A DNA stretch of 64,000 bases. Source: Salpingoeca rosetta (taxonomy: Eukaryota; Protista; Choanoflagellata). Both the position numbers and the translations under genes were made by a program. Where the stretch lies: assembly GCA_033442325.1 (NCBI GenBank), contig JAWQFM010000033.1, positions 670,909 through 734,908 on the forward strand, written 5' to 3'. This document shows positions 42,439-60,105 of this stretch, piece after piece (position 1 is the stretch's first letter; every line of letters starts with the position of its first letter). Below the pieces are notes generated by a model. The model searched no databases. It was given only the letters and a program-made list of their open reading frames with translations, and was not told the origin of the DNA.

Positions 42439-44608
42439 TCACTCCGAGTCCCATGCATCATCATCAGACACGTCGCTGTCGTCGTCAGCCAGGACCAGGC
42501 CGCGCTCAAGAGCGTCGCGCATGTAGGCAGCAGTGCGGCCAACAAACACGGCATCTGGCCAGCGCCAATTGACAGACTCGCGGTACACCCTGCACCACAC
42601 CAAGGTCAAGGTGGGTAGCGCGGGGAGTGCCTGCATGTCCTCAATCGTGCACATGTGCAGAAACAGACGGTGCACGCCTTCAAGCCGCGCCCAGGTGGAG
42701 GCGTCGTTGATGCTGCAGCTGAGCATGCGACACGAATACACGTTAGACATGCGCGGCAGGCGCGCAGGCGGCCTCAGGGCACACAGCTCCACCAGTCGCA
42801 CGTCTCGCACCGCCGTCAGCTCAAGCCCCTCGCCGCCATCCACCCTCAGCACATCGGCGTCCACGACAGACACCCGCCCGCTGCAGCTGCAAAGCTCCAC
42901 GCGCTTGCACCCGGCAATCTCGGTACTGAGGAAATGGCACCGCGTCAGGTCGAGGTGGGTAATGCTGCGCAGGGCGGCAACACCGTCCACAGTGACTGGC
43001 ACCTCGTGGTCCACGCTGATGGTCAGCCGCCGCACGTGCGCAAAGTGGCCCAGGTCAAGCGTTGGATAGGTGGTGCTGGTCCGTGCAGCTGGCAAGATTG
43101 CACAAGCACGGGTGCTGCTGTTGCCATCGCTGCTGTGCTGGTGGCCGTGGTCGTGGCGTTGGCTGTTGGTGTGGTCGTGGTCGTGGTTGTGGCTGTCGCT
43201 GTTGGTGTCGGCATTGCTGTCATCAATGTCCTCGAGGACTAGCTCAACTTGGTTGCTGCTGCGTGCCTCGCCCTCCCTGGCGACTTCGCCTCCATCATTA
43301 TCATCCTGCGCTTGCCCCTCTTCCTCCTCTTCTGCATGTGCTCCCCCTACACGCTCATCAACCTCGCCACCTCCTCGGCGGCTCGCGAGTCCAGCACCAA
43401 CAGCATCGTCGTCGTGGTCGTCTTCGTCGTCACTGCCTGTGGTGATGCACAGCTGCAGTTGGCGCACGCACGCGGGGAGATTGGCAACGGCAGCGTCATG
43501 CACCAAAGCGCGCGTGGCCGTGAGCACGCAGTCTTTGATGCTGACAAAGACGTGGTCTGGGATGCAGTGCAGCAGGGAGAGGTCGCCCACTGCATCGCCA
43601 CTCAGCCCGAGCCTGTCCACGCGCTGTCCTAAGGTGTGCAGCATGGCTGATGAGAGCGGCATCTTGAGGTGCACGCGGCGGGCGTGGCGGAAGGTCGGCA
43701 GCGCACGCAGCGATGGGCAGTCCTGGAGCGCAAAGTAGCCGAGTTGACCGCAGGTGGTGTGGTCACTGGCCGTGGTGGGAATGGTGGGAATGGTGGCGTT
43801 GCCGTCACGGTTGCTGCTGCTGTTCATGTTGTTACTGTTGCTGCTGCTACTGCTGTTGTTGTGTCGACCATGATCATCATGATGATCATCACCACCACCA
43901 CCATGTGCAGCAGTACTCTTGCAAGCACCACCGCCACCAACACCACCGTCACTGCCATTGCCATTGGATAAGACCAGCTCCGTGATGCCAGCGCAGTCTG
44001 TGACCTCGATGCAGCGTGCGTGGGGCAGGTGCAGCACGCTTGGCAGGCCGCTGACATCAAAGAGAGACACGTCCTCGCAGTACAGCGCGTTGTGTGGCGC
44101 CTGCAGCCTGGCGCTGGTTAAGTGTAGTGTGGGGATGCGCGTGAGTGGGGTCAGGTCCACACCGTACATGCGATGAAGATGAACTTCACGTGCGGTGGAC
44201 AGTGAAGACACGTCCTCAACCGCGGGCAGGTCAGACAGGTGCACGACGTCCACGCCAGCCAGGATGCTGATGTCTCGAATCAGGGTCGTGCCAAACCCGC
44301 CAATGTACACCGACCGCACACGCTGCATAGTCCCGCGTATGTGCTCTTGCGTGTCATGCACAAACCAGCACAGGTGGCCAATATCGACGAACTCGACGCT
44401 GTCCACGGTACTTGTCGCGTGCAGCGTGACGATATCGGCTTTCCGCACCGCAAGATGCTGCACCGGGCCTCGGACGCTGATGTTGAGGGAGCCCGTGCCG
44501 GCACTGTACCGGCTGCACACCTCAGCCAGCTCATCCGCATCCGCCTGGTTCATCAGCAGCGCCGACACCGAGTACCACGCAGGCTGCAACGCCTGCTGCT
44601 GCTGCTGC

Positions 44609-44662
<54 letters not shown>

Positions 44663-44703
44663 AGTTGTTGTTGTTGTTGTTGTTGTTGTAATTGTTGTTG
44701 TAG

Positions 44704-44741
<38 letters not shown>

Positions 44742-45534
44742 CTCTCGTGTGCCCGTTTGGGCTGCTGTTGGCTGCATCCTGGGGGCTAAGGCGATAGGGC
44801 TCGCCATCAGCATTGGCACAGCCGCCCTCTTCACTTCCATTGTCACTGTCGTCGCTGTCGGAGTGTGTTCGCCGCCACAACTCCAAGTCGGCCAGCGTCA
44901 AGTACCTGACCCGCACGCAGCGCCGGAAGTCGTCCCTAAACCAGGGCGGGTACCACGCGTCGGGTTTCAGCAGGAAGGGGCACTGGTGCCGCCACGTCAT
45001 GCCCAGCCAGCTGTGCACAAGGAATCGCATCTGCAGCCACGCACGGTACCTCACCGGCGTCATGCCGCTAGCTGTGGCGGGGCATTGTTCCGCAGCCGTG
45101 TGGGTTTCTGCGACCGTGTCTGTAGCTTTGTCTGCAGCTGTGTCTGCAGCTGTGTCTGTGTCTGCAGTCGTGTCTTGCCGCGCATCCTCCGTGATGACTC
45201 CACATGCATCACCATGAGCGGCATCATCCCCGTTGTTCCGTTCAACCGCACCCCCCTCCACCCCTAACCCATCATCGTCCTCATCGCCATCATCATCATC
45301 ATCCAGCCAGGTCTCGGACACGGCACGCTTCATCCACACACTCCACTTTGGCATGGCCCACGGCAGATCGTGGTACAGCTCCCGGCACGTGAGCATGAGG
45401 TTCATAACCGAGCGCACGCGGGCCTTATCCTCATAGTCGCTCTCCACAACCCCATCATCATCATAACGATGGTCGTTGTCATTGTTGTTCAGCACATGCC
45501 CAGCCACAACCGCCCACACATCCACACTGAACAT
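42439..45534 (-). CDS. Intronless F-box-like / divergent LRR protein, copy 1 (about 1030 aa, polyQ and acidic inserts)
   Basis: Uninterrupted ORF. N-terminal MFSVDVWAVVAGHVL...VMNLMLTCRELY resembles a split F-box. LRR-like units IRDISILAGVDVVHLS, VEDVSSLSTAREVHL, VDLTPLTRIPTLHL. Collinear homology with the ORF at 60534-62941. Confidence 0.78.
44593..44740 (-). repeat. Coding (CAA/CAG)n polyglutamine tract
   Basis: About 49 codons, nearly all Gln, inside LRR copy 1; absent as a long tract in copy 2. Confidence 0.9.
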
Positions 45535-46699
45535 CTGCTGTTGGTGCGTGTCGCGTGTGCGTGCGTGCGTGTGTGTGTTATAACCGCATTGGAATTTTGT
45601 TTTAAGACTTCTATCAATCGTCCGAACCCATTGCGCGCAAATGTGAAGAAGCAAGACCAGCGAAGTCTGATGACACGAACACATCACACACACACCACGC
45701 ACCACAGCAACGCACGCACGCGTCAACGCACAGCCTCTCTCCCTCTCACTCTTCGTGTGCAGCGAAAAAGGGTTGGGCCCGATGTCTCGATGCAAGACAC
45801 AGCCATTTTTGCGTCCATTGAAATGGCCATCATCAGCATCAGGCGCAGAAGCAGAAGCAAGACGCCGAAGAAACACTGCCCCCCACCCCCACCAGCAGCA
45901 ACAACCCCGCCTCGCCATCACCATCACTGAACGAGAATGTAACCATCGCCGCCGTGCTGCCACTGCAGCTGCTGCGACAAAGCAAGGAGCACACACCGCA
46001 CTGCAAACAATGCGCCAGGTTAGTTGGTTGGAGCACAGAACAGAAGGAGGCAAGGAAGGAAGGAAGGAAGAAAGGAAGAAGAAACAACAACAACAACAAT
46101 GTGCCAACCACACAGGCTTGCTTATGTTTGGGTGTGTGAGTGCGCTTGTGTTTGTGACTTTGTTACTTTTACACCAGCAGCAGCAGCAGCTGCTGCCACC
46201 ACCTCCACAAAGTCTCACACAGCCTCGAGCCGATCATTTTCTTCTTCTTCTTCTTCTTCTCTTCCATCTGACTGGCTTGTTTGCCAATGCACCTGGCCAT
46301 CCAAGGCATCACTTTCACCGTCCATCGACATTGTATCGACCGCACACGCACAAGCAAGTACGTGTACTCACAATCACACATGGATTGACAATCACACACA
46401 CGCACACGCACACCCGCACCCGCACCCGCACCCGCACCCGCACACGCACACACACACACACACGCTCGCGCGCACACATACACGCACGCACACACACACA
46501 CACACATGCACATGCACACACATGCACACACACACACGCACACACCCATTCCCTCTCTCTCTCTCCCACACCTTCCCCGTCTCACATCTACATGTACATT
46601 CATTCGCATACCTAGCTGTAACGGAGGAGACCTTTCTGGTTCCACAACCCTTCGCAGCAATCGAGCAGAAACAACAACTCCTCGCATCTGCCTGACAAG

Positions 46700-49600
46700 A
46701 TGCCGACCGCACGGCCACCGTCCGATATGGACACCGTGCCACTCGTGAACAAGGACGACGACAACGTGCGTGCCATCGACAACTACCTCGTCCCGGATGA
46801 CCATGTGGTCAAGGTACCCGCGTCCAAGCTCGGCGCCGACGACGACAATTACACCAGCACCACCGCCGCCGTCAGCACCGCCAGCGGTAGCAGGAGCAAG
46901 CGCTTGGGCGTGGTGGGCGTTGCGCTGGGCTTCCTGGGCGTGCTCATCTTTGCCATCATCGTGGCCACGTCCCTCATCGCCCTCATGAACAGCGCCAGCC
47001 TCAAGGACACCGCCGTTCACTCCATGGACATCTACATCATGGATCCCAGTCCCGACGGAAACAGCGACAACAACAGCGGCGGCAGTGGTCATACATCTTC
47101 CTCCTCCTCCTCCTCCTCCTCCTCCGCCTCCTCCTCCTCCTCCTCCTCCTCCTCCTCCTCCTCCTCCTCCTCCTCCTCCTTCTCCTCCTCCTCCTCCTCC
47201 TCATCATCATCATCATCATCAACATCGTCTTCTTCGTCGTCGGAGCCACGAGCGTTTGCATCGGCGCTGCCCTCGACAGTTCCAACACCAGACAACGCAG
47301 ATGTCGTGGTGGCCATGAGCCTCGCACTGCCCACCATTGCCAGCATGCATGCCGTGTACCTCGACGACATGACCTGCACCGTCTTCGCCGATGGCCAGCA
47401 GCTGGCGCGCGCGTCCACGCCGCAGCTGGGCAGGCTTGGCGACCCCCACGTGTCGTTCAACCTCAGCATGCTCGCCACAAACCAGGACCTGCTGGGCCGC
47501 CTGCGCTCTGTGCTGCTCACAGACAACATCGCCCCGATGACCACCCCTGCCCCCAATGCCTCAGCAGCAGGTGATGGTGGCGCTGGCGCAGTGCCCGTGT
47601 TCACGGCAGCCTGCGGCGTCACCACGCGTGTGCGGCTCTTTGGCACCATCTCGACCGGCAGCTTTGTGATCCAGCGCACCTTCAACATCACCGACACGCT
47701 GATCAATGCTGCACAGTCCATCAGTGACCGCGCTGCTGCTACCAACGAGAACATTGACAGCGCCATGGGTGCAGGCCACACCGCCAGCACCGGCACGCAC
47801 GATGAGCAGGAAGCACAGCACCCGCTGCTGCTGTATGTCCGCGGCCTTCTCTCGAACTCGTCATGGACCCCTGTGAAGCTCGGATCGGTGCCTGCAAGCA
47901 TCCTGCGGCAGACCATGCCCGTTGCCAACATCACCGTGCACCTCCCGCCCACCGCGTTTCTCTTCTGGACACAGACGCCGCTCTCGTCAGCATCATCATC
48001 GTCAGCATCATCGTCATCATCGTCGTCAGCGCCCAACATGCCGAGCCACTTGGCGGTGTTTGGCCCCGTTGCGCCCTGTCGCATTGGCGAGGATGTGGTG
48101 GTGGTTGGCTTTCACCGCAACAGCGTGCCCATTGTCCGTGGCGGGCGCCTGAAGACGAGCATGCGCCTCAAGGTGCTGTCCTCCGCCACGGAGCTGGATG
48201 TCGTCGGCAACAACGCGTCGACACAGCTGCTGTCGCGCCTCGATGCACGCGGCTCTGACGGTGGCAGGGGCTTGCTGTCCCTGCTTGGCTTCCACCTCGC
48301 CTCCTCCCTCATCAAGGCGCAGTCGACATCGTACTTCCGCTCCGCCAACACCCACGACAACCTCCTCACCTTCCTCCTGGGCCACTTCCAGCTCGCACAC
48401 ATGAGCACCACCACACGCAGCAGCACCACCACCACCACCACGATTACGCCTTCGTCGCCCAACGCACCCCCACCACCGCCACCATCATCTTCATCATCAA
48501 ACAGTGACGACAGCAGCAGCAGCAGCAGTGGTCGGCGCCGACGCCTTGTGCTGGACGAGGACAAGTGGGCCTACACAGCGCTGTATGTGGAGGTGCGCGT
48601 GTACGATACACTCGACGGGCAGGCGCAGGGCGGCCTGTCCGCCAACGTCACGCTGGCACAGGGCACCGGTGGTGTTGTTGAGCACGACATGCACGCCACC
48701 CTCGGCGCCGCGCTGTCGTTCCACGGGAAGCTGCAGGCGAGCGTGGCCGGCGCTGTCGACTTCAACGACAACGACAAGACGATGAGCATTGCAGGGGAGG
48801 TGGAGACGCCCCAGTACCCGGCGGCGTGGGTCGCGGTGGACACGTGGTGGACGTGGTGGGAGGACGGCGACGCGCTGCACATCAACACCACACACACGAC
48901 CACGTTTATGGAGAATGGCGACGAGGCGAGCGGGCTGCTGCGCATCCAGGCTGACAAGGCAAGCAACGAGCTCTTTGTGCACCACACGATGACGAGTGAC
49001 CGCGGGTTTGACACGACGATGCAGGTGCTGCGCGCCAACGCATCTACCCGCGACACGCGCGACTACCACATCCTGGAGGTGACGGTGAGCGAGGCCGCGG
49101 TGGCGGTGGACGAGGAGAGCAAGCTTGCGCTGGACGAGTGGCGTGGCATGTTGCTGCAGGTGGCACGCGCCAACAGCAGCAGCGGCGCGCACGCCATCCT
49201 CATGACCATCGACGCCGACCTGTCTGGCGTGGCGCTGGGCGGACCAACCACGTTCACCGCGCAGCTGTGGTCGGACGACGGCAGCACCATCGTCATGGAC
49301 GCGGAGCTGAGCGGCGGCACCAACGCCCTCCTCACGTGGCACTCCAACGTCACCACCAGCGACACGCCCCAGTATGACGTCATCGACTTTGACGTGACGC
49401 AGCTCGGCCTGTACGCGGACGGCGACCCCATCGTGGCCGTGGACACGTGGCACCGTTTCCGTGTGATGACGGTCAAGGGCGGCGTGTTTGACGTGGGCAC
49501 GCGCGAGCTGGTGGTGTCTGTGCTGGTTGACTTTGAGGGCAGCGCACTGCCGCAGGACGCCGCCACGCTCGTCGCTGATGTCAGCGGCAACGGTGAAGTG

Positions 49601-52578
49601 ATTGACATTGACGTTGCTGCCGTGGGCGACAACACGCTCAACATGACGTGGCACTCCAACGCCACGGCGGCGGAGGACGCAGACTACGACATTTTCCTCT
49701 TTGAGCTCCCGCGTGCCGGCTTCTACTGGAACGACGATGCCGTGTTTGCGGTCGACACCTGGCACCAGTTTGTCATCAAGAGCCTCAAGTCGGGTGGTGG
49801 TGGTGCTGGTGACGACCTGAACGACTTTGAGGCGTGGGTGCTGTTTGACATGGAGGTTGGCGATGAGGTCGCTGCGATCAGCTTTGGTGCGTGGTACAAC
49901 GACGGCGTGGTGTCGCTCAACACGTCGTGGGCAGGCACGGACGCGCTGCTGTTTGCACTGCACGTCAACGCCACCAGCACAGAAGATGCAGACTACGACA
50001 TCTTCCTCCTGGACATGCCGCGTGCCGGCTTCTACTGGAACGACGACGCCGTGTTTGCCGTCGACACCTGGCATCAGTTTGTCATCAAGTCTGTCAAAGT
50101 TGACACGGACGACCTCAACGACTTTGAGGCGTGGGTGCTGTTTGACATGGAGATTGGCGATGAGGTTGGCACAATCACCTTCGAGGAATGGTACAACAAC
50201 GACGTCCTCTCTTTCAACCTCTCATGGGCCGGTGTGGACACACTGCTGTTGACCGTGCACGCCAACGCCACCAGCACAGAAGATGCAGACTACGACATCT
50301 TCCTCCTGGACATGCCGCGTGCCGGCTTCTACTGGAACGATGATGCCTTCTTTGCGGTGACAGACTGGAGCGAGGGCACGATCAAGACCCTCAAAGCCGG
50401 CAGCAGTGCTGCGCTGAACGACTTTGAGGCGTGGGTGCTGTTTGACATGGAGGTTGGCGATGAGGTTGGCACTTTTGCGTTTGAGGAATGGTACAACGGC
50501 GGTGTTCTGTCGTTCAACTCATCGTGGACTGGCACGGACACAGTGCTGTGCACCGTGCACGCCAACGCCACCAGCACGGAGAACGCAGACTACGACATCT
50601 ATCTCCTCGACATGCCACGTGCCGGCGTCTACCGCAACGGCGATGCCGTGTTTGCTGTCAAGGACTGGGACCACTTTGAGGTGTGGTCGGTGAAGAGCGG
50701 AGGCACACCCTCGCCCAACGACGTGGTTGCGTCGTTCCTGGTCACGCTGGAGGGCGACCTGGTGCCCAAGGGCGAGATGAGCGAGGATTTCCACATGGCA
50801 TCGCGCGACAACAGCTTCAACATGACGTCCACTGTTGGGTTCCCCGCATCCTCGCTCACCCTCGTTGTGATGCGACAGGAGGTGGACAGCCACAACTACG
50901 TAACCTTTGATGTCACCCGTCACCTGCACGGGATTGCTGTGCCGGAGGCGTTGGAGGACTGGCACGCGGACCTGGCCCTGGACCTGTACGATGATGGCCT
51001 GGGCAACTGCCACTTTGCCAACGTGACCGATTTTGTGTTCATGCATGACCTCACGCGCGTATTTGTTGTGCACCCGCACTCGCTGCTGCACCTCTGCGAT
51101 GACACGCGCACGCTCGGGATTGACCTGCTGTTTGCCGTGACCACGCTCGGTGGCGCCGGCGGTGACGTCGGTGCTGTGGCCATGGTGCTGGACGCAGACT
51201 TTGATGACGCAGACAGCAGTGGTGGTGGTGGTGGCGATGACTTGCGTGCAAGCATCTCGCTTGGCCACTCGATGGTGCGACGCCCGGAGGAGGGGCCCGT
51301 GCAGGCGTGCGGTGTCCTGACGGGCGATGGGGATGGCGTGGACGCAACGGTGGAGGTGTGCGAGTATGTGACAGACTCGTCCGAGGCTGAGGTCGCGGAC
51401 GGCAGCGCGCGTCTGTTCTTCCAGGAGACCATGGGCATCGAGAGCACAGGCATGAACATGACGTGGTCGCTCTCGGGCCTCCTGTTTGCCACCTCGGCTG
51501 GCTCAACCCTGCCAACCGTGCCCACCATCTCCACGACATCGTCATCATCATCGTCATCATCATCGTCATCGTCACCACCAGCATCGTCCTCGTCGTCAAT
51601 GTCAACCAGCTCCTCTTCCACTTCGACGGCTCCGATTGCGACGAGCAACGAGACAACGACACCGCCAATCTTCACTAGCAGCAGCAGCAGCGGGCCGACG
51701 ACCACAACCACCACCACCACCACCACAACTACAACCACAACTACAACAACGGAGGCCGAGACGACTGTCGCAACGACGACCACCGCCACGACCACAACGA
51801 CGCCCAAGAAGAAGCTGCGTGCGGTGAAGCTCAAGTTTGTGTTCCTGAAGGATTTCAGCGAGTGGACGACGGAGGCCGAGAACGGCACGGACAGCGACGA
51901 GTACAAGGCGCGCTACGATCTCTGGCAGAATCTCCTCAACGAGGGGTGAGCTGAAAGGGGGGAGGAGGGGTTGTGTGTGCATGCGTGTGTGGGTGTGCTT
52001 GTGCGTGTGCGTGTGCGTGTGTGTATGTGAGGGGGAGTGCGTGTGCGTGTGTGGGTAGGGGTGTGCGTGTGCGTGTGCGTGCAACTTTTGTTCCGTTTGG
52101 GGCACACTTTGACACTGTGTGTGTGTGCTTGCTTGATTGATTGTGTGTTTTCAGGCTGCTCGACCTGCTGTTGTCGCAAGTGATCAGCGAGGGCGCGCAG
52201 GAAGGCAGTGTCGTGTGGAATGCGCGCGTTGAGGATCGTGAGAAGGAGGACGTGGACGTCATCAAGACATCCGTCATGAAGCAAGGCGTCACATTCGCCT
52301 CTCTCGGCCAAGGAACCGTCCAAGGCGGTGAGTGTGCTGTGTGTGTGCACGTGTGTGCGTGCGTGTGTGTGTGTGTGTGTGCGCGCGATACGTGCACCGA
52401 GGCAAACTTGCTCACAGGCCGACGTTCTGTTCGTGTGTTTGTTTCGGCAACAGACGTTGTGGATGACGACGGCAGCGACGACACTGGTACGTTGTGATGC
52501 GGCCTGCGCAGGCGTGTTTGGGCTCGCCTTATTTTGCGGCACGTGTCACGCAGTGCATCATCACGCGCCACTTACACA

Positions 52579-52619
<41 letters not shown>

Positions 52620-53009
52620 ACACTCACACACACACACACACACATACAACTACTCACGCACACAACTACTCACGCACACGCACACACACACACACACACA
52701 TCCGCAGGTGTGATTGTTGGAGCGGTGCTCGGCACGATTGCCGGCGTTGCGCTGATTGCGCTCATCTTTGTTCTCTACAACCGACGTGGGCAGCGCGAAG
52801 AGGAGGAGGCCGCCGAGAAGAAGCACGAAGAGGAGCTGAAGCAGCAGCACCATCACGAGCAGCAACACCACCACCGCCCGCACGAGCGCCGACACAACGT
52901 GTACGAGGCGCCCGCTGCTGTTACGGGCGACAAGACAGACAAGAGCAGGCAGCGGCCAGGGGAATACCACCTCGAACACCACCACCGGGCAGTGGAGGTG
53001 GAGGTGTGA
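46700..53009 (+). CDS. Large (about 1900 aa) double membrane-anchored glycoprotein with ~100-aa tandem repeats, Ser/Thr stalk and SEA-like domain; 4 exons
   Basis: Exons 46700-51945, 52155-52327, 52454-52486, 52708-53009 join in frame. TM1 LGVVGVALGFLGVLIFAIIVATSLIAL; TM2 VIVGAVLGTIAGVALIALIFVLY; many NxS/T sequons; EGSVV motif. Confidence 0.85.
49031..50860 (+). repeat. Six coding tandem repeats of about 100 aa (297-312 bp period)
   Basis: Units start near 49031, 49340, 49652, 49961, 50258 and 50558, with consensus HxNATSTEDADYDIFLLDMPRAGFYWNDDAVFAVDTW...LNDFEAWVLFDME. The inner copies are near-identical in DNA blocks. Confidence 0.9.
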
Positions 53010-53014
53010 TGATG

Positions 53015-53049
<35 letters not shown>

Positions 53050-53229
53050 GGGCTTGTTTCGGTTGTGGCTTTCATGTTGTTGGCTTGACACGTTCATTTT
53101 TGGGAGTGGGGAGCACGTAGCTGAGACAAGCCGACCCGTGTCAACAACCTTCATAAACGACAAGAGCTGTAACAATGGGATTGACATTGTTGGCGGTGTA
53201 GTGCGTGACAGTTGGCCAGATCACTGCAT

Positions 53230-60105
<6,876 letters not shown>

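What the first reader, a model, noticed from the sequence alone, without database searches (positions are those of the whole stretch)
46700..53009. Doubly anchored giant loop protein with two candidate cleavage sites (RRRR and SEA G/SVV)
Seen: N-terminal TM preceded by RSKR and C-terminal TM followed by NRR, implying both termini are cytosolic around a roughly 1700-aa lumenal or extracellular loop. GRRRR at about 48530-48544 follows a flexible Ser/Thr/Pro linker. A mucin-like Thr/Ser stalk precedes a SEA-like segment (LKFVFLKDFSEW...DSDEYK...EGSVVW). Known: RxRR is a furin/kexin consensus, and SEA domains of transmembrane mucins self-cleave at G/SVV. Inference: a precursor processed into a type II membrane piece, a sheddable repeat ectodomain and a type I stub. 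I do not recognise this architecture from characterised proteins.
Basis: partly seen in the sequence, partly recalled or inferred. Interest (0 to 1): 0.72.

Follow-up and report, generated by a model that had tools for sequence, protein, structure and literature searches.

The report
Two-anchor giant choanoflagellate surface glycoprotein
This is a real, transcribed gene of the choanoflagellate Salpingoeca rosetta for a 1,917-residue orphan membrane glycoprotein that is probably held in the membrane at both ends; it has a conserved multi-arginine site and a small membrane-proximal module that looks SEA-like but cannot be shown to be a SEA domain.

Summary
Window 46700-53009 (+) is a four-exon gene of Salpingoeca rosetta encoding 1,917 aa. 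From N to C it has:
- a 68-aa N-tail ending in RSKR
- TM1 (aa 69-97)
- a 1,721-aa loop: Ser/Thr linkers, beta-rich domains, five clear ~100-aa repeats plus degenerate ones, and a 100-aa S/T stalk
- a ~104-aa alpha/beta module with G1766-S1767-V-V-W
- a mini-exon
- TM2 followed by NRR
- a 76-aa tail

RNA data confirm introns 1 and 2, show that the stalk is kept in the transcript, and show continuous sense-strand coverage that includes TM1.

The family is tiny. It comprises this gene, a 5'-truncated duplicate (PTSG_10645) and one 29%-identical paralogue. That paralogue keeps the N-tail, the TM and an RRRRR run in the same, otherwise unconserved, linker.

The juxtamembrane module has one outside relative, a lectin-module-TM transcript, which keeps G-S-T-V-W.

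SEA membership is not shown:
- Pfam SEA gives no hit.
- hhalign against two S. rosetta SEA domains gives under 1% probability.
- The AlphaFold model is poor (pLDDT 50) and matches only generic ferredoxin-like folds.

Both cleavages remain inferences. I put convertase cleavage at about 0.45 and self-cleavage at about 0.25.

I rate it a new variant of a known kind (mucin-like membrane glycoprotein) of moderate interest. The scan had noted this same stretch once before (s1-432504).

The parts
46700..51945 (+). Exon 1 (aa 1-1748 plus two bases of codon 1749)
   Evidence: ORF. The GTGAG donor is seen. Intron 1 is confirmed by RNA reads and spliced contigs.
46700..46903 (+). N-terminal tail of 68 aa, predicted cytosolic, acidic, with Y29 (YLVP) and Y51, ending in RSKR
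   Evidence: The 564-nt RNA contig of run X2 starts about 238 nt upstream of 46800, so it covers the ATG.
46904..46990 (+). TM1, a predicted uncleaved signal anchor (aa ~69-97)
   Evidence: It is the only strong hydropathy peak of exon 1. The C15 paralogue has an equivalent TM after a longer tail.
47075..47254 (+). Poly-Ser linker 1 (the (TCC)n tract)
   Evidence: RNA contigs break here.
47255..48409 (+). Domains A (aa 186-430) and B (aa 447-570), joined by a Ser linker
   Evidence: They are collinear with the C15 paralogue. Pfam finds nothing. The Atlas feature search gives a weak LEA-2/DUF3712/Tag1 lead, score 0.81.
48410..48544 (+). S/T/P linker 3 ending in G-RRRR (aa 611-615, nt 48530-48544), the candidate proprotein-convertase site
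   Evidence: RRRR is expected 0.003 times by composition. The C15 paralogue has RRRRR in the same, otherwise unconserved, linker. P-domain convertase genes are present in the genome.
48545..51499 (+). All-beta ectodomain: degenerate units (aa 616-850), five clear ~100-aa repeats (aa ~851-1345, DNA period 297 nt) and a post-repeat domain (aa 1346-1600)
   Evidence: AlphaFold on two units gives 7 strands per unit at pLDDT 55. No specific fold match was found. There are 26 N-x-S/T sequons in exon 1.
51500..51805 (+). Mucin-like Ser/Thr stalk (aa ~1601-1702)
   Evidence: It is retained in the spliced RNA contig X5 record 13, whose record and genome coordinates stay collinear across 51530-51753.
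51806..52327 (+). Juxtamembrane alpha/beta module (aa ~1703-1806), split by intron 1 (51946-52154). G1766|S1767 lies at nt 52204-52209.
   Evidence: It is 37% identical to the module of P0003 and shares G-S-[VT]-V-W-x-A-R-V. The AlphaFold element order is strand, helix, helix, (bridge), strand, helix, strand, and a strand starts right after G-S. Exon 2 is 100% identical in the C30 copy, whereas the flanking introns are 88-92% identical.
52454..52486 (+). Exon 3, a 33-nt acidic mini-exon (DVVDDDGSDDT)
   Evidence: The joint 52326/7 to 52453/4 is seen in RNA. The exon is present in the annotated paralogue P0001.
52708..53009 (+). Exon 4: TM2 (aa 1819-1841, nt ~52710-52778), NRR, a 76-aa His/Gln/Glu-rich tail with YEAP and YHLE, and the stop codon
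   Evidence: It is 100% identical in protein to P0001 residues 1378-1477, with three synonymous and no non-synonymous differences from the C30 copy.

Best explanation
The locus is a single expressed four-exon gene of Salpingoeca rosetta. It encodes a 1,917-aa, lineage-restricted membrane glycoprotein with hairpin topology.

Topology and layout:
- A 68-aa cytosolic N-tail and an uncleaved signal anchor (TM1) put the chain into the ER lumen.
- A 1,721-aa exoplasmic loop follows.
- TM2 returns the chain, leaving a 76-aa cytosolic tail.
- The loop is a string of beta-rich domains and ~100-aa all-beta repeats spaced by Ser/Thr (probably O-glycosylated) linkers.
- The loop ends in a mucin-like stalk and a ~104-aa alpha/beta module next to TM2.

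Most likely mechanism (inferred):
- In the secretory pathway a kexin/furin-type convertase cuts after the conserved RRRR. This separates a type II piece (TM1 plus domains A and B) from the repeat ectodomain.
- The ectodomain stays tethered through the stalk and the juxtamembrane module.
- That module sits where SEA domains sit in mucins, dystroglycan and choanoflagellate Sema-FN1. It may act as a mechanical fuse or shedding point at its conserved G-S-[VT]-V-W.
- The protein would then serve as a glycocalyx, adhesion or tension-bearing surface molecule whose two Tyr-containing tails face the cytosol.

What is shown: the gene model, transcription, the domain order, motif conservation and family restriction.
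What is inferred: the topology, both cleavages and the function.

My probabilities:
- one gene: 0.9
- two-anchor topology: 0.7
- convertase cleavage: 0.45
- module homologous to SEA: 0.4
- self-cleavage at G|S: 0.25
For: - Gene model and RNA. Introns 1 and 2 are confirmed, the stalk is retained, and sense-strand depth is present in every bin, including the TM1 bin.
- Organism and annotation: one search returns only PTSG_10645 of S. rosetta. One search shows that this model is the C30 duplicate at 100% identity, not this gene.
- Topology: hydropathy; RSKR before TM1 and NRR after TM2. The 26 sequons and the S/T linkers lie in the loop. The C15 paralogue keeps the tail, TM, juxtamembrane DIYI(M/I)D, poly-Ser and the same domain order (E 7e-83, 29% identity).
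- Multibasic site: 0.003 occurrences expected by chance; RRRRR at the same linker position in C15; convertase P-domains in the genome.
- Module: the only non-self relative among 1.84 billion representatives is P0003, aligned over the module plus TM. L029 shows P0003 is mucin-like linker, C-type lectin, module, Ser linker, TM and Tyr tail. G-S-[VT]-V-W is conserved.
- Fold: the model's element order and the fold searches fit a ferredoxin-like sandwich.
- Register: G-S falls in the same alignment column and at the same distance from strand 1 as in two S. rosetta SEA domains.
- Selection: the module and tail exons are the most conserved part between the C33 and C30 copies.
- Literature: choanoflagellate SEA domains with G|S[V/I]VV next to S/T-rich regions are described in PMC8011033.
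Against: - No Pfam family, SEA included, hits any part. The SEA profile finds only C28 in this genome.
- hhalign of the module against S. rosetta SEA sequences gives probability 0.1-0.4%.
- Both AlphaFold models are low confidence (pLDDT 50 and 55), so the fold matches are weak. No SEA chain is listed.
- The segment before G-S is polar and Gly/Ala-rich rather than a hydrophobic beta-2 strand, which weakens the case for strain-driven self-cleavage.
- The C30 duplicate lacks TM1 yet looks constrained, so the N-terminal anchor may not be essential to the C-terminal part.
- No read or contig bridging the poly-Ser tract was listed.
- The 3' end of the C15 paralogue is masked, so conservation of the second anchor could not be checked.
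- There is no protein-level evidence of any kind.
Confidence: 0.5

Rival explanations
1. It is a stable two-anchor loop glycoprotein with no processing. RRRR and G-S-V-V are structural or incidental features, and the protein works as one uncut chain, for example as a glycocalyx or adhesion molecule.
For: There is no evidence of cleavage of any kind. SEA membership fails every sequence test. The pre-G-S segment is unlike canonical SEA beta-2. GSVV alone is expected 0.125 times per protein.
Against: RRRR is expected 0.003 times, and the run is kept in a linker that is otherwise unconserved at 29% identity. G-S-[VT]-V-W-x-A-R-V is kept at 37% identity in an unrelated architecture. Convertases are present in the genome.
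Confidence: 0.3
2. It is an ordinary type I mucin-like receptor. TM1 is a long, cleaved signal peptide, or translation or processing removes the N-tail, so only TM2 anchors the mature protein.
For: Small residues (SAS) follow the hydrophobic stretch. The C30 duplicate carries the rest of the protein without TM1 and looks constrained. The relative P0003 is type I-like.
Against: The hydrophobic stretch is about 29 residues long and starts 68 residues from the first Met. No internal Met lies closer to it. These are features of signal anchors (established knowledge). The C15 paralogue has an even longer N-tail (~100 aa) before its TM.
Confidence: 0.15
3. It is an annotation or assembly artefact. 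The N-terminal TM-containing part and the repeat/C-terminal part are two genes, or the C33 copy is a mis-assembly of the C30 locus.
For: The public annotation holds only the 5'-truncated PTSG_10645. RNA contigs break at the poly-Ser tract.
Against: A single 1,749-codon frame runs across the junction. RNA depth is similar on both sides (X2 75.6 against 89.5, X5 11 against 15), and reads are present in the bins between. The C15 paralogue has the same collinear N-terminal and repeat parts in one frame. C33 and C30 differ by 3-12% in sequence and in repeat number.
Confidence: 0.05

Closest known systems
Transmembrane mucins and other SEA-bearing surface proteins (MUC1/MUC16 type, dystroglycan, choanoflagellate Sema-FN1)
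   Same: They share an S/T-rich stalk next to a ~100-aa membrane-proximal alpha/beta module that carries G-S-V-V, followed by one TM helix and a Tyr-containing tail. S. rosetta itself has canonical SEA with FAPG|SVVV, and this is described for Craspedida Sema-FN1 in PMC8011033.
   Different: There is no SEA profile match. The residues before G-S are polar. An N-terminal signal anchor replaces a cleaved signal peptide. The ectodomain is dominated by orphan all-beta repeats, not by PTS repeats, FN3 or cadherin-like domains.
Precursors cut by proprotein convertases in the ectodomain (Notch S1 site, plexin-B, many adhesion receptors)
   Same: A multibasic R-x-R/K-R motif lies in an exposed linker between folded ectodomain parts, and convertases are encoded in the genome.
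   Different: Here the cut would release a separate type II membrane fragment rather than produce a type I heterodimer. Cleavage is untested.
Tag1/DUF3712 and other LEA-2-repeat type II membrane proteins
   Same: Both have an N-terminal cytosolic tail, a single signal anchor and then a long lumenal array of ~100-aa beta-sandwich-like units. The Atlas feature search of aa 186-570 returns only LEA-2-like/DUF3712 clusters (score 0.81, a lead only).
   Different: No Pfam LEA-2 or DUF3712 hit appears even at E of 10 or less. Those proteins have no C-terminal TM, no mucin stalk and no SEA-like module. The fold of the repeats is unresolved.
Two-pass membrane proteins with both ends cytosolic and one large outside loop (CD36/SCARB family, ENaC/P2X type)
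   Same: They have the same predicted N-in/C-in hairpin topology with a glycosylated loop.
   Different: Their loops are 300-450 aa of a single fold, against a 1,721-aa modular, repeat- and linker-rich loop here. There is no sequence relation.

Membership tests
SEA domain (Pfam PF01390) | Match to the SEA sequence profile | tested here: not met
   There is no SEA hit for the exon pieces, for P0001, or for P0001:1255-1400 at E of 10 or less. The genome-wide PF01390 scan finds only C28:706292-706501. hhalign against the C28 and C24 SEA sequences gives probability 0.1-0.4%.
SEA domain (Pfam PF01390) | Alpha/beta sandwich of order beta-alpha-beta-beta-alpha-beta | tested here: inconclusive
SEA domain (Pfam PF01390) | G|S[V/I]VV motif at the beta2-beta3 turn | tested here: inconclusive
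   G1766-S-V-V-W is present and conserved as G-S-T-V-W in P0003. It sits immediately before a predicted strand and in the same column as the G-S of two S. rosetta SEA domains. However, the preceding residues (SEGAQEG / GRGATPG) are not a hydrophobic beta-2 strand.
SEA domain (Pfam PF01390) | Membrane-proximal position beside an O-glycosylated S/T-rich region | tested here: met
   The 100-aa S/T stalk lies directly upstream, and TM2 starts 12 residues downstream. P0003 has the module, then a Ser linker, then a TM.
SEA domain (Pfam PF01390) | Autoproteolysis with the fragments staying associated | not testable with these tools
   This needs protein work.
Proprotein-convertase substrate | R-x-[K/R]-R in an exposed exoplasmic linker, with a convertase present | tested here: met
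   GRRRR follows a 40-aa S/T/P linker. The run is conserved as RRRRR in the C15 paralogue. Four PF01483 P-domain matches in the genome pass the cut-off.
Proprotein-convertase substrate | Actual cleavage after the basic run | not testable with these tools
   This needs N-terminomics or blots.
Transmembrane mucin | Type I topology with a cleaved signal peptide and a dominant PTS tandem-repeat domain | tested here: not met
   The N-terminal hydrophobic segment is a 29-residue stretch that begins at residue 69. The S/T tracts total about 300 of 1,917 aa, and the bulk is beta-rich domains.
LEA-2 / Tag1 (DUF3712) | Match to the LEA_2, LEA-2_4, LEA-2L_5 or DUF3712 profiles | tested here: not met
   Pfam gives no hit at E of 10 or less for domains A, B and C, single repeats or the C15 equivalent. 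Only a sub-threshold language-model lead exists.

The most novel reading that the evidence does not exclude
The protein is made as a membrane hairpin and is then cut twice: by a convertase at the conserved RRRR, and by self-cleavage of a highly divergent SEA-type module at G1766|S1767. This yields a type II piece, a large repeat ectodomain held only non-covalently, and a type I stub with a Tyr-motif tail. That would be a three-part, force-sensitive surface device in the closest unicellular relatives of animals, built on an otherwise orphan fold family.
Probability: 0.15. Interest if true: 0.65.

Novelty: new variant of a known kind. Interest (0 to 1): 0.42.

Why it matters
Choanoflagellates are the reference point for how animal cell-surface machinery arose, and S. 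rosetta can be manipulated genetically.

If the module is a divergent, self-cleaving SEA relative and the RRRR site is used, this protein would show that the mucin/dystroglycan/Notch style of pre-cut, force-sensitive ectodomains had already been combined in unusual ways before animals. Here it would sit on a chain anchored at both ends.

Even on the conservative reading it is useful in three ways:
- It corrects the public annotation, which holds only a truncated duplicate with the stalk spliced out.
- It defines a small orphan family.
- It defines a mobile ~100-aa juxtamembrane module that current domain libraries do not cover.

Tried and rejected
- Pfam on exon pieces, on single domains, on single repeats and on the spliced paralogue gave nothing credible. 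FIST, Mucin15 and TMEM51 were sub-threshold noise.
- The word-index protein search found only PTSG_10645.
- The exhaustive HMMER search with P0001:278-1477 found only itself, P0003 and P0002. I reject P0002 as a relative: it is an unrelated internally repeated protein matched in 39-aa stretches.
- A search for more relatives of the P0003 module found none.
- A search for relatives of the canonical C28 SEA exon, meant to build a SEA profile, found none.
- A metagenome scan with the module alignment found none.
- The Atlas feature search on the module gave no usable hit.
- The 3' end of the C15 paralogue lies in a masked N stretch. The first readable DNA after it is a different, TPR-type gene, so conservation of TM2 and the module there could not be tested.
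- The high-depth 'joints' at 48003-48030, 48510-48530 and 51214-51236 are cross-mapping of Ser/Gln-codon low-complexity reads, not splicing.
- Paper searches for PTSG_10645 and SRR23274238 found nothing. Pei & Grishin 2017 is not held.
- The window's exons were never joined. Every step that needed the spliced module used the database protein P0001, which is the C30 paralogue. It differs from the window in 2 residues of the exon-1 tail and is identical in exons 2 and 4.
Full report
ORGANISM AND LOCUS

The window has GT-AG introns packed with (CA)n/(GT)n microsatellites and about 58% G+C. The only database protein that matches the region is 'hypothetical protein PTSG_10645 [Salpingoeca rosetta]' (P0001). 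The window is G000:C33:670909-734908 of a 55.4-Mb, 68-contig assembly. The organism is therefore the choanoflagellate S. rosetta.

GENE MODEL

- The 1,749-codon ORF from 46700 ends in a stop that is part of a GTGAG donor.
- Reading the splice sites gives exon 1 46700-51945, exon 2 52155-52327, exon 3 52454-52486 (33 nt) and exon 4 52708-53009.
- All exon phases are consistent, and the product is 1,917 aa.
Where a spliced sequence was needed I used the database protein P0001, which is the paralogous copy.

RNA EVIDENCE

- Two stranded raw RNA-seq runs give low but continuous coverage in one direction. X22 has depth in all 30 bins from 46800 to 52799, including the bin that holds TM1.
- Intron 1 is skipped by three X22 reads and by contigs of X2 and X5. 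Intron 2 is skipped by one read and by the same contigs.
- The 36-letter 'side' after the second joint fits a 33-nt exon that is then spliced onward.
- X5 contig 13 is collinear with the genome across 51530-51753: the gap is 224 nt in both the record and the genome. The S/T stalk is therefore coding sequence, not an intron as in the public model of the paralogue.
- An X2 contig reaches about 238 nt upstream of 46800, so it covers the ATG.
- Contigs break only at the poly-Ser tract and inside the 297-nt tandem repeats. Depths on the two sides of the poly-Ser tract are similar.
- No listed molecule bridges that tract, so a single transcript is very likely but not strictly proven.

ANATOMY

- aa 1-68: acidic tail with Y29 (YLVP) and Y51, ending in RSKR.
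- aa 69-97: the only strong hydrophobic segment of exon 1.
- aa 98-125: a juxtamembrane stretch that includes DIYIMD.
- aa 126-185: poly-Ser.
- aa 186-430: domain A. A Ser linker follows.
- aa 447-570: domain B.
- aa 571-615: an S/T/P linker ending in G-RRRR.
- aa 616-850: degenerate repeat-like units.
- aa ~851-1345: five clear ~100-aa repeats, each with an H-x-N-A/V-T ... D-Y-D-I ... F-A-V-D-T-W-H signature.
- aa 1346-1600: a further beta-rich domain.
- aa 1601-1702: the S/T stalk.
- aa ~1703-1806: an alpha/beta module split by intron 1, with G1766-S1767-V-V-W.
- The acidic mini-exon.
- aa 1819-1841: TM2, then NRR and a 76-aa His/Gln/Glu-rich tail with YEAP and YHLE.
- Exon 1 has 26 N-x-S/T sequons and only 8 Cys.
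- The positive-inside rule, the sequons and the S/T linkers all point to N-in/C-in topology with a 1,721-aa exoplasmic loop.
- The hydrophobic stretch is too long (~29 residues) and too far from the N-terminus (68 residues, no closer Met) for a typical cleaved signal peptide. This rests on established knowledge and was not tested here.

FAMILY

- C30 duplicate. A segmental duplication copies window ~48008 to at least 54518 onto contig C30 at 92-97% nucleotide identity. P0001/PTSG_10645 is 100% that copy. It starts inside the second Ser linker, so it lacks the tail, TM1 and domain A, and it has one extra repeat. Its public model splices out the stalk.
- Constraint on both copies. Exons are 97.6-100% identical, while introns and flank are 88-92.6% identical. 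Exon 2 has no change at all. Exon 4 has three synonymous and no non-synonymous changes. Both copies therefore look constrained, most of all in the module, TM and tail part.
- C15 paralogue. A third member on C15 (from 1484925) is collinear from the N-tail and TM through domains A, B and C into the repeats (29% identity over 816 aa, E 7e-83; TM and domain A segment 25%). Its 3' part is masked, and the DNA after the mask is another gene, so its C-terminus could not be examined.
- Outside S. rosetta. An exhaustive HMMER search of 1.84 billion representatives with the C-terminal 1,200 aa of P0001 found nothing convincing except P0003 (E 2e-4), aligned over the module plus TM.
- The window's own protein is not in the protein databases.

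THE MULTIBASIC SITE

- Arg makes up 3.5% of this protein, so RRRR is expected 0.003 times.
- In the C15 paralogue the linker between domains B and C is otherwise unalignable, yet it holds RRRRR 12 residues before the conserved Trp that opens domain C. In this gene the distance is 8 residues. In both, acidic residues follow the run.
- The genome has four PF01483 P-domain matches above the cut-off.
- A proprotein-convertase site is therefore a reasonable inference. I put it at about 0.45.

THE JUXTAMEMBRANE MODULE

P0003 comes from a 2,083-nt transcript-like contig (L029) of an unidentified organism. Its open frame reads Thr/Pro-rich linker, C-type lectin domain, module, Ser linker, TM, then a tail with Tyr motifs. 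The module is therefore an autonomous, membrane-proximal unit used in two different architectures. The two versions are 37% identical and share G-S-[VT]-V-W-x-A-R-V and G-V-x-F-x-S-L-x-x-G-T-V.

Is it a SEA domain? Points in favour:
- Its position beside a mucin-like stalk and the TM.
- The G-S-V-V motif.
- An AlphaFold element order of strand, helix, helix, (bridge), strand, helix, strand, with the third strand starting right after G-S.
- Fold searches that return only ferredoxin-like sandwiches, the fold class SEA belongs to.
- The G-S falls about 65 residues from the module start, exactly as in the canonical S. rosetta SEA on C28 (FAPG|SVVV after FN3 repeats, probably the Sema-FN1 described in PMC8011033). 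It also aligns with the C24 SEA-like domain (FYPG|SINI after poly-Thr).

Points against:
- No Pfam SEA hit at any threshold.
- hhalign probability under 1%.
- pLDDT of only 50, with no SEA chain in the top fold-search lists.
- A polar, Gly/Ala-rich segment where SEA has its hydrophobic beta-2 strand.

I put homology to SEA at about 0.4 and self-cleavage at about 0.25.

THE REST OF THE LOOP

- No Pfam family matches any piece.
- AlphaFold on two repeats with a nine-row alignment gives seven strands per unit at pLDDT 55.
- Foldseek finds nothing, and VIA-align finds only geometric likeness to porin sheets. I do not read that as a membrane barrel.
- A language-model feature search of aa 186-570 returned only LEA-2-like/DUF3712/Tag1 clusters at a sub-threshold score of 0.81. 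That fits the type II anchor and the ~100-aa beta units, but it is a lead, not a result.

VERDICT

The two-anchor hairpin is the best reading of the sequence. The RRRR site has real comparative support. 'SEA' should be softened to 'SEA-like in position, motif and gross topology; membership unproven'. The three-piece processing model is possible but untested.

The protein is best filed as a new variant of the mucin-like, pre-cleavable surface glycoprotein theme, built from orphan domains and restricted to S. rosetta as far as current data show. Interest is moderate.

Noticed in passing
window 48008-54518 and G000:C30:715387-721985: This is a segmental duplication at 92-97% identity. Its upstream breakpoint lies in Ser-codon low-complexity DNA, and it extends past this gene into the next one. 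The C30 copy (PTSG_10645) has no N-terminal signal or anchor of its own, yet its exons are far better conserved than its introns. How its product enters the secretory pathway is unexplained. An unrelated signal-anchor ORF lies just upstream, at C30:712867-714702.
   Followed up: partly
G000:C30:719206-719539 (equivalent to window ~51518-51802): The public model PTSG_10645 treats the S/T-stalk coding sequence as an intron. In the window's copy, a spliced RNA contig keeps this stretch, so the public model is probably wrong there.
   Followed up: partly
G000:C15:1484925-1488767 and onward: This is a third family member with a ~100-aa N-tail, a TM, the same domain order and near-identical tandem repeats. 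Everything after ~1488900 up to 1500949 reads N (withheld).
   Followed up: partly
L029:1-1246 (Logan contig of SRR23274238): This is a transcript fragment from an unidentified organism. It encodes a Thr/Pro linker, a C-type lectin domain, the same juxtamembrane module, a Ser linker, a TM and a tail with NPLYVYEGE and NTYNPFEF motifs.
   Followed up: partly
window 46784-46795 and 52899-52910: Both predicted cytosolic tails carry a Y-x-x-P motif (YLVP in the N-tail, YEAP in the C-tail). This is the pattern bound by Crk/Abl/Nck-type SH2 domains. It is of possible interest in a species with a large phosphotyrosine toolkit, but it is speculative.
   Followed up: no
G000:C28:706292-706501 (-) and G000:C24:545489-545512 (+): These are two other membrane-proximal SEA-type domains in the genome. 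One is canonical (FAPG|SVVV) and follows FN3 repeats. The other (FYPG|SINI) follows directly after a ~40-residue poly-Thr stalk.
   Followed up: partly
window 42439-46218 (-): The upstream divergent neighbour is a long ORF with leucine-rich-repeat-like units and a ~60-residue poly-Gln run. Only ~480 nt, mostly (CA)n, separate it from this gene's ATG.
   Followed up: no
window 47990, 48005, 48510-48530 and 51214-51236: RNA depth spikes of 10- to 40-fold, with many loose ends, occur at short Ser/Gln-codon repeats. They are cross-mapping from other genes and would mislead automated splice or variant callers.
   Followed up: yes
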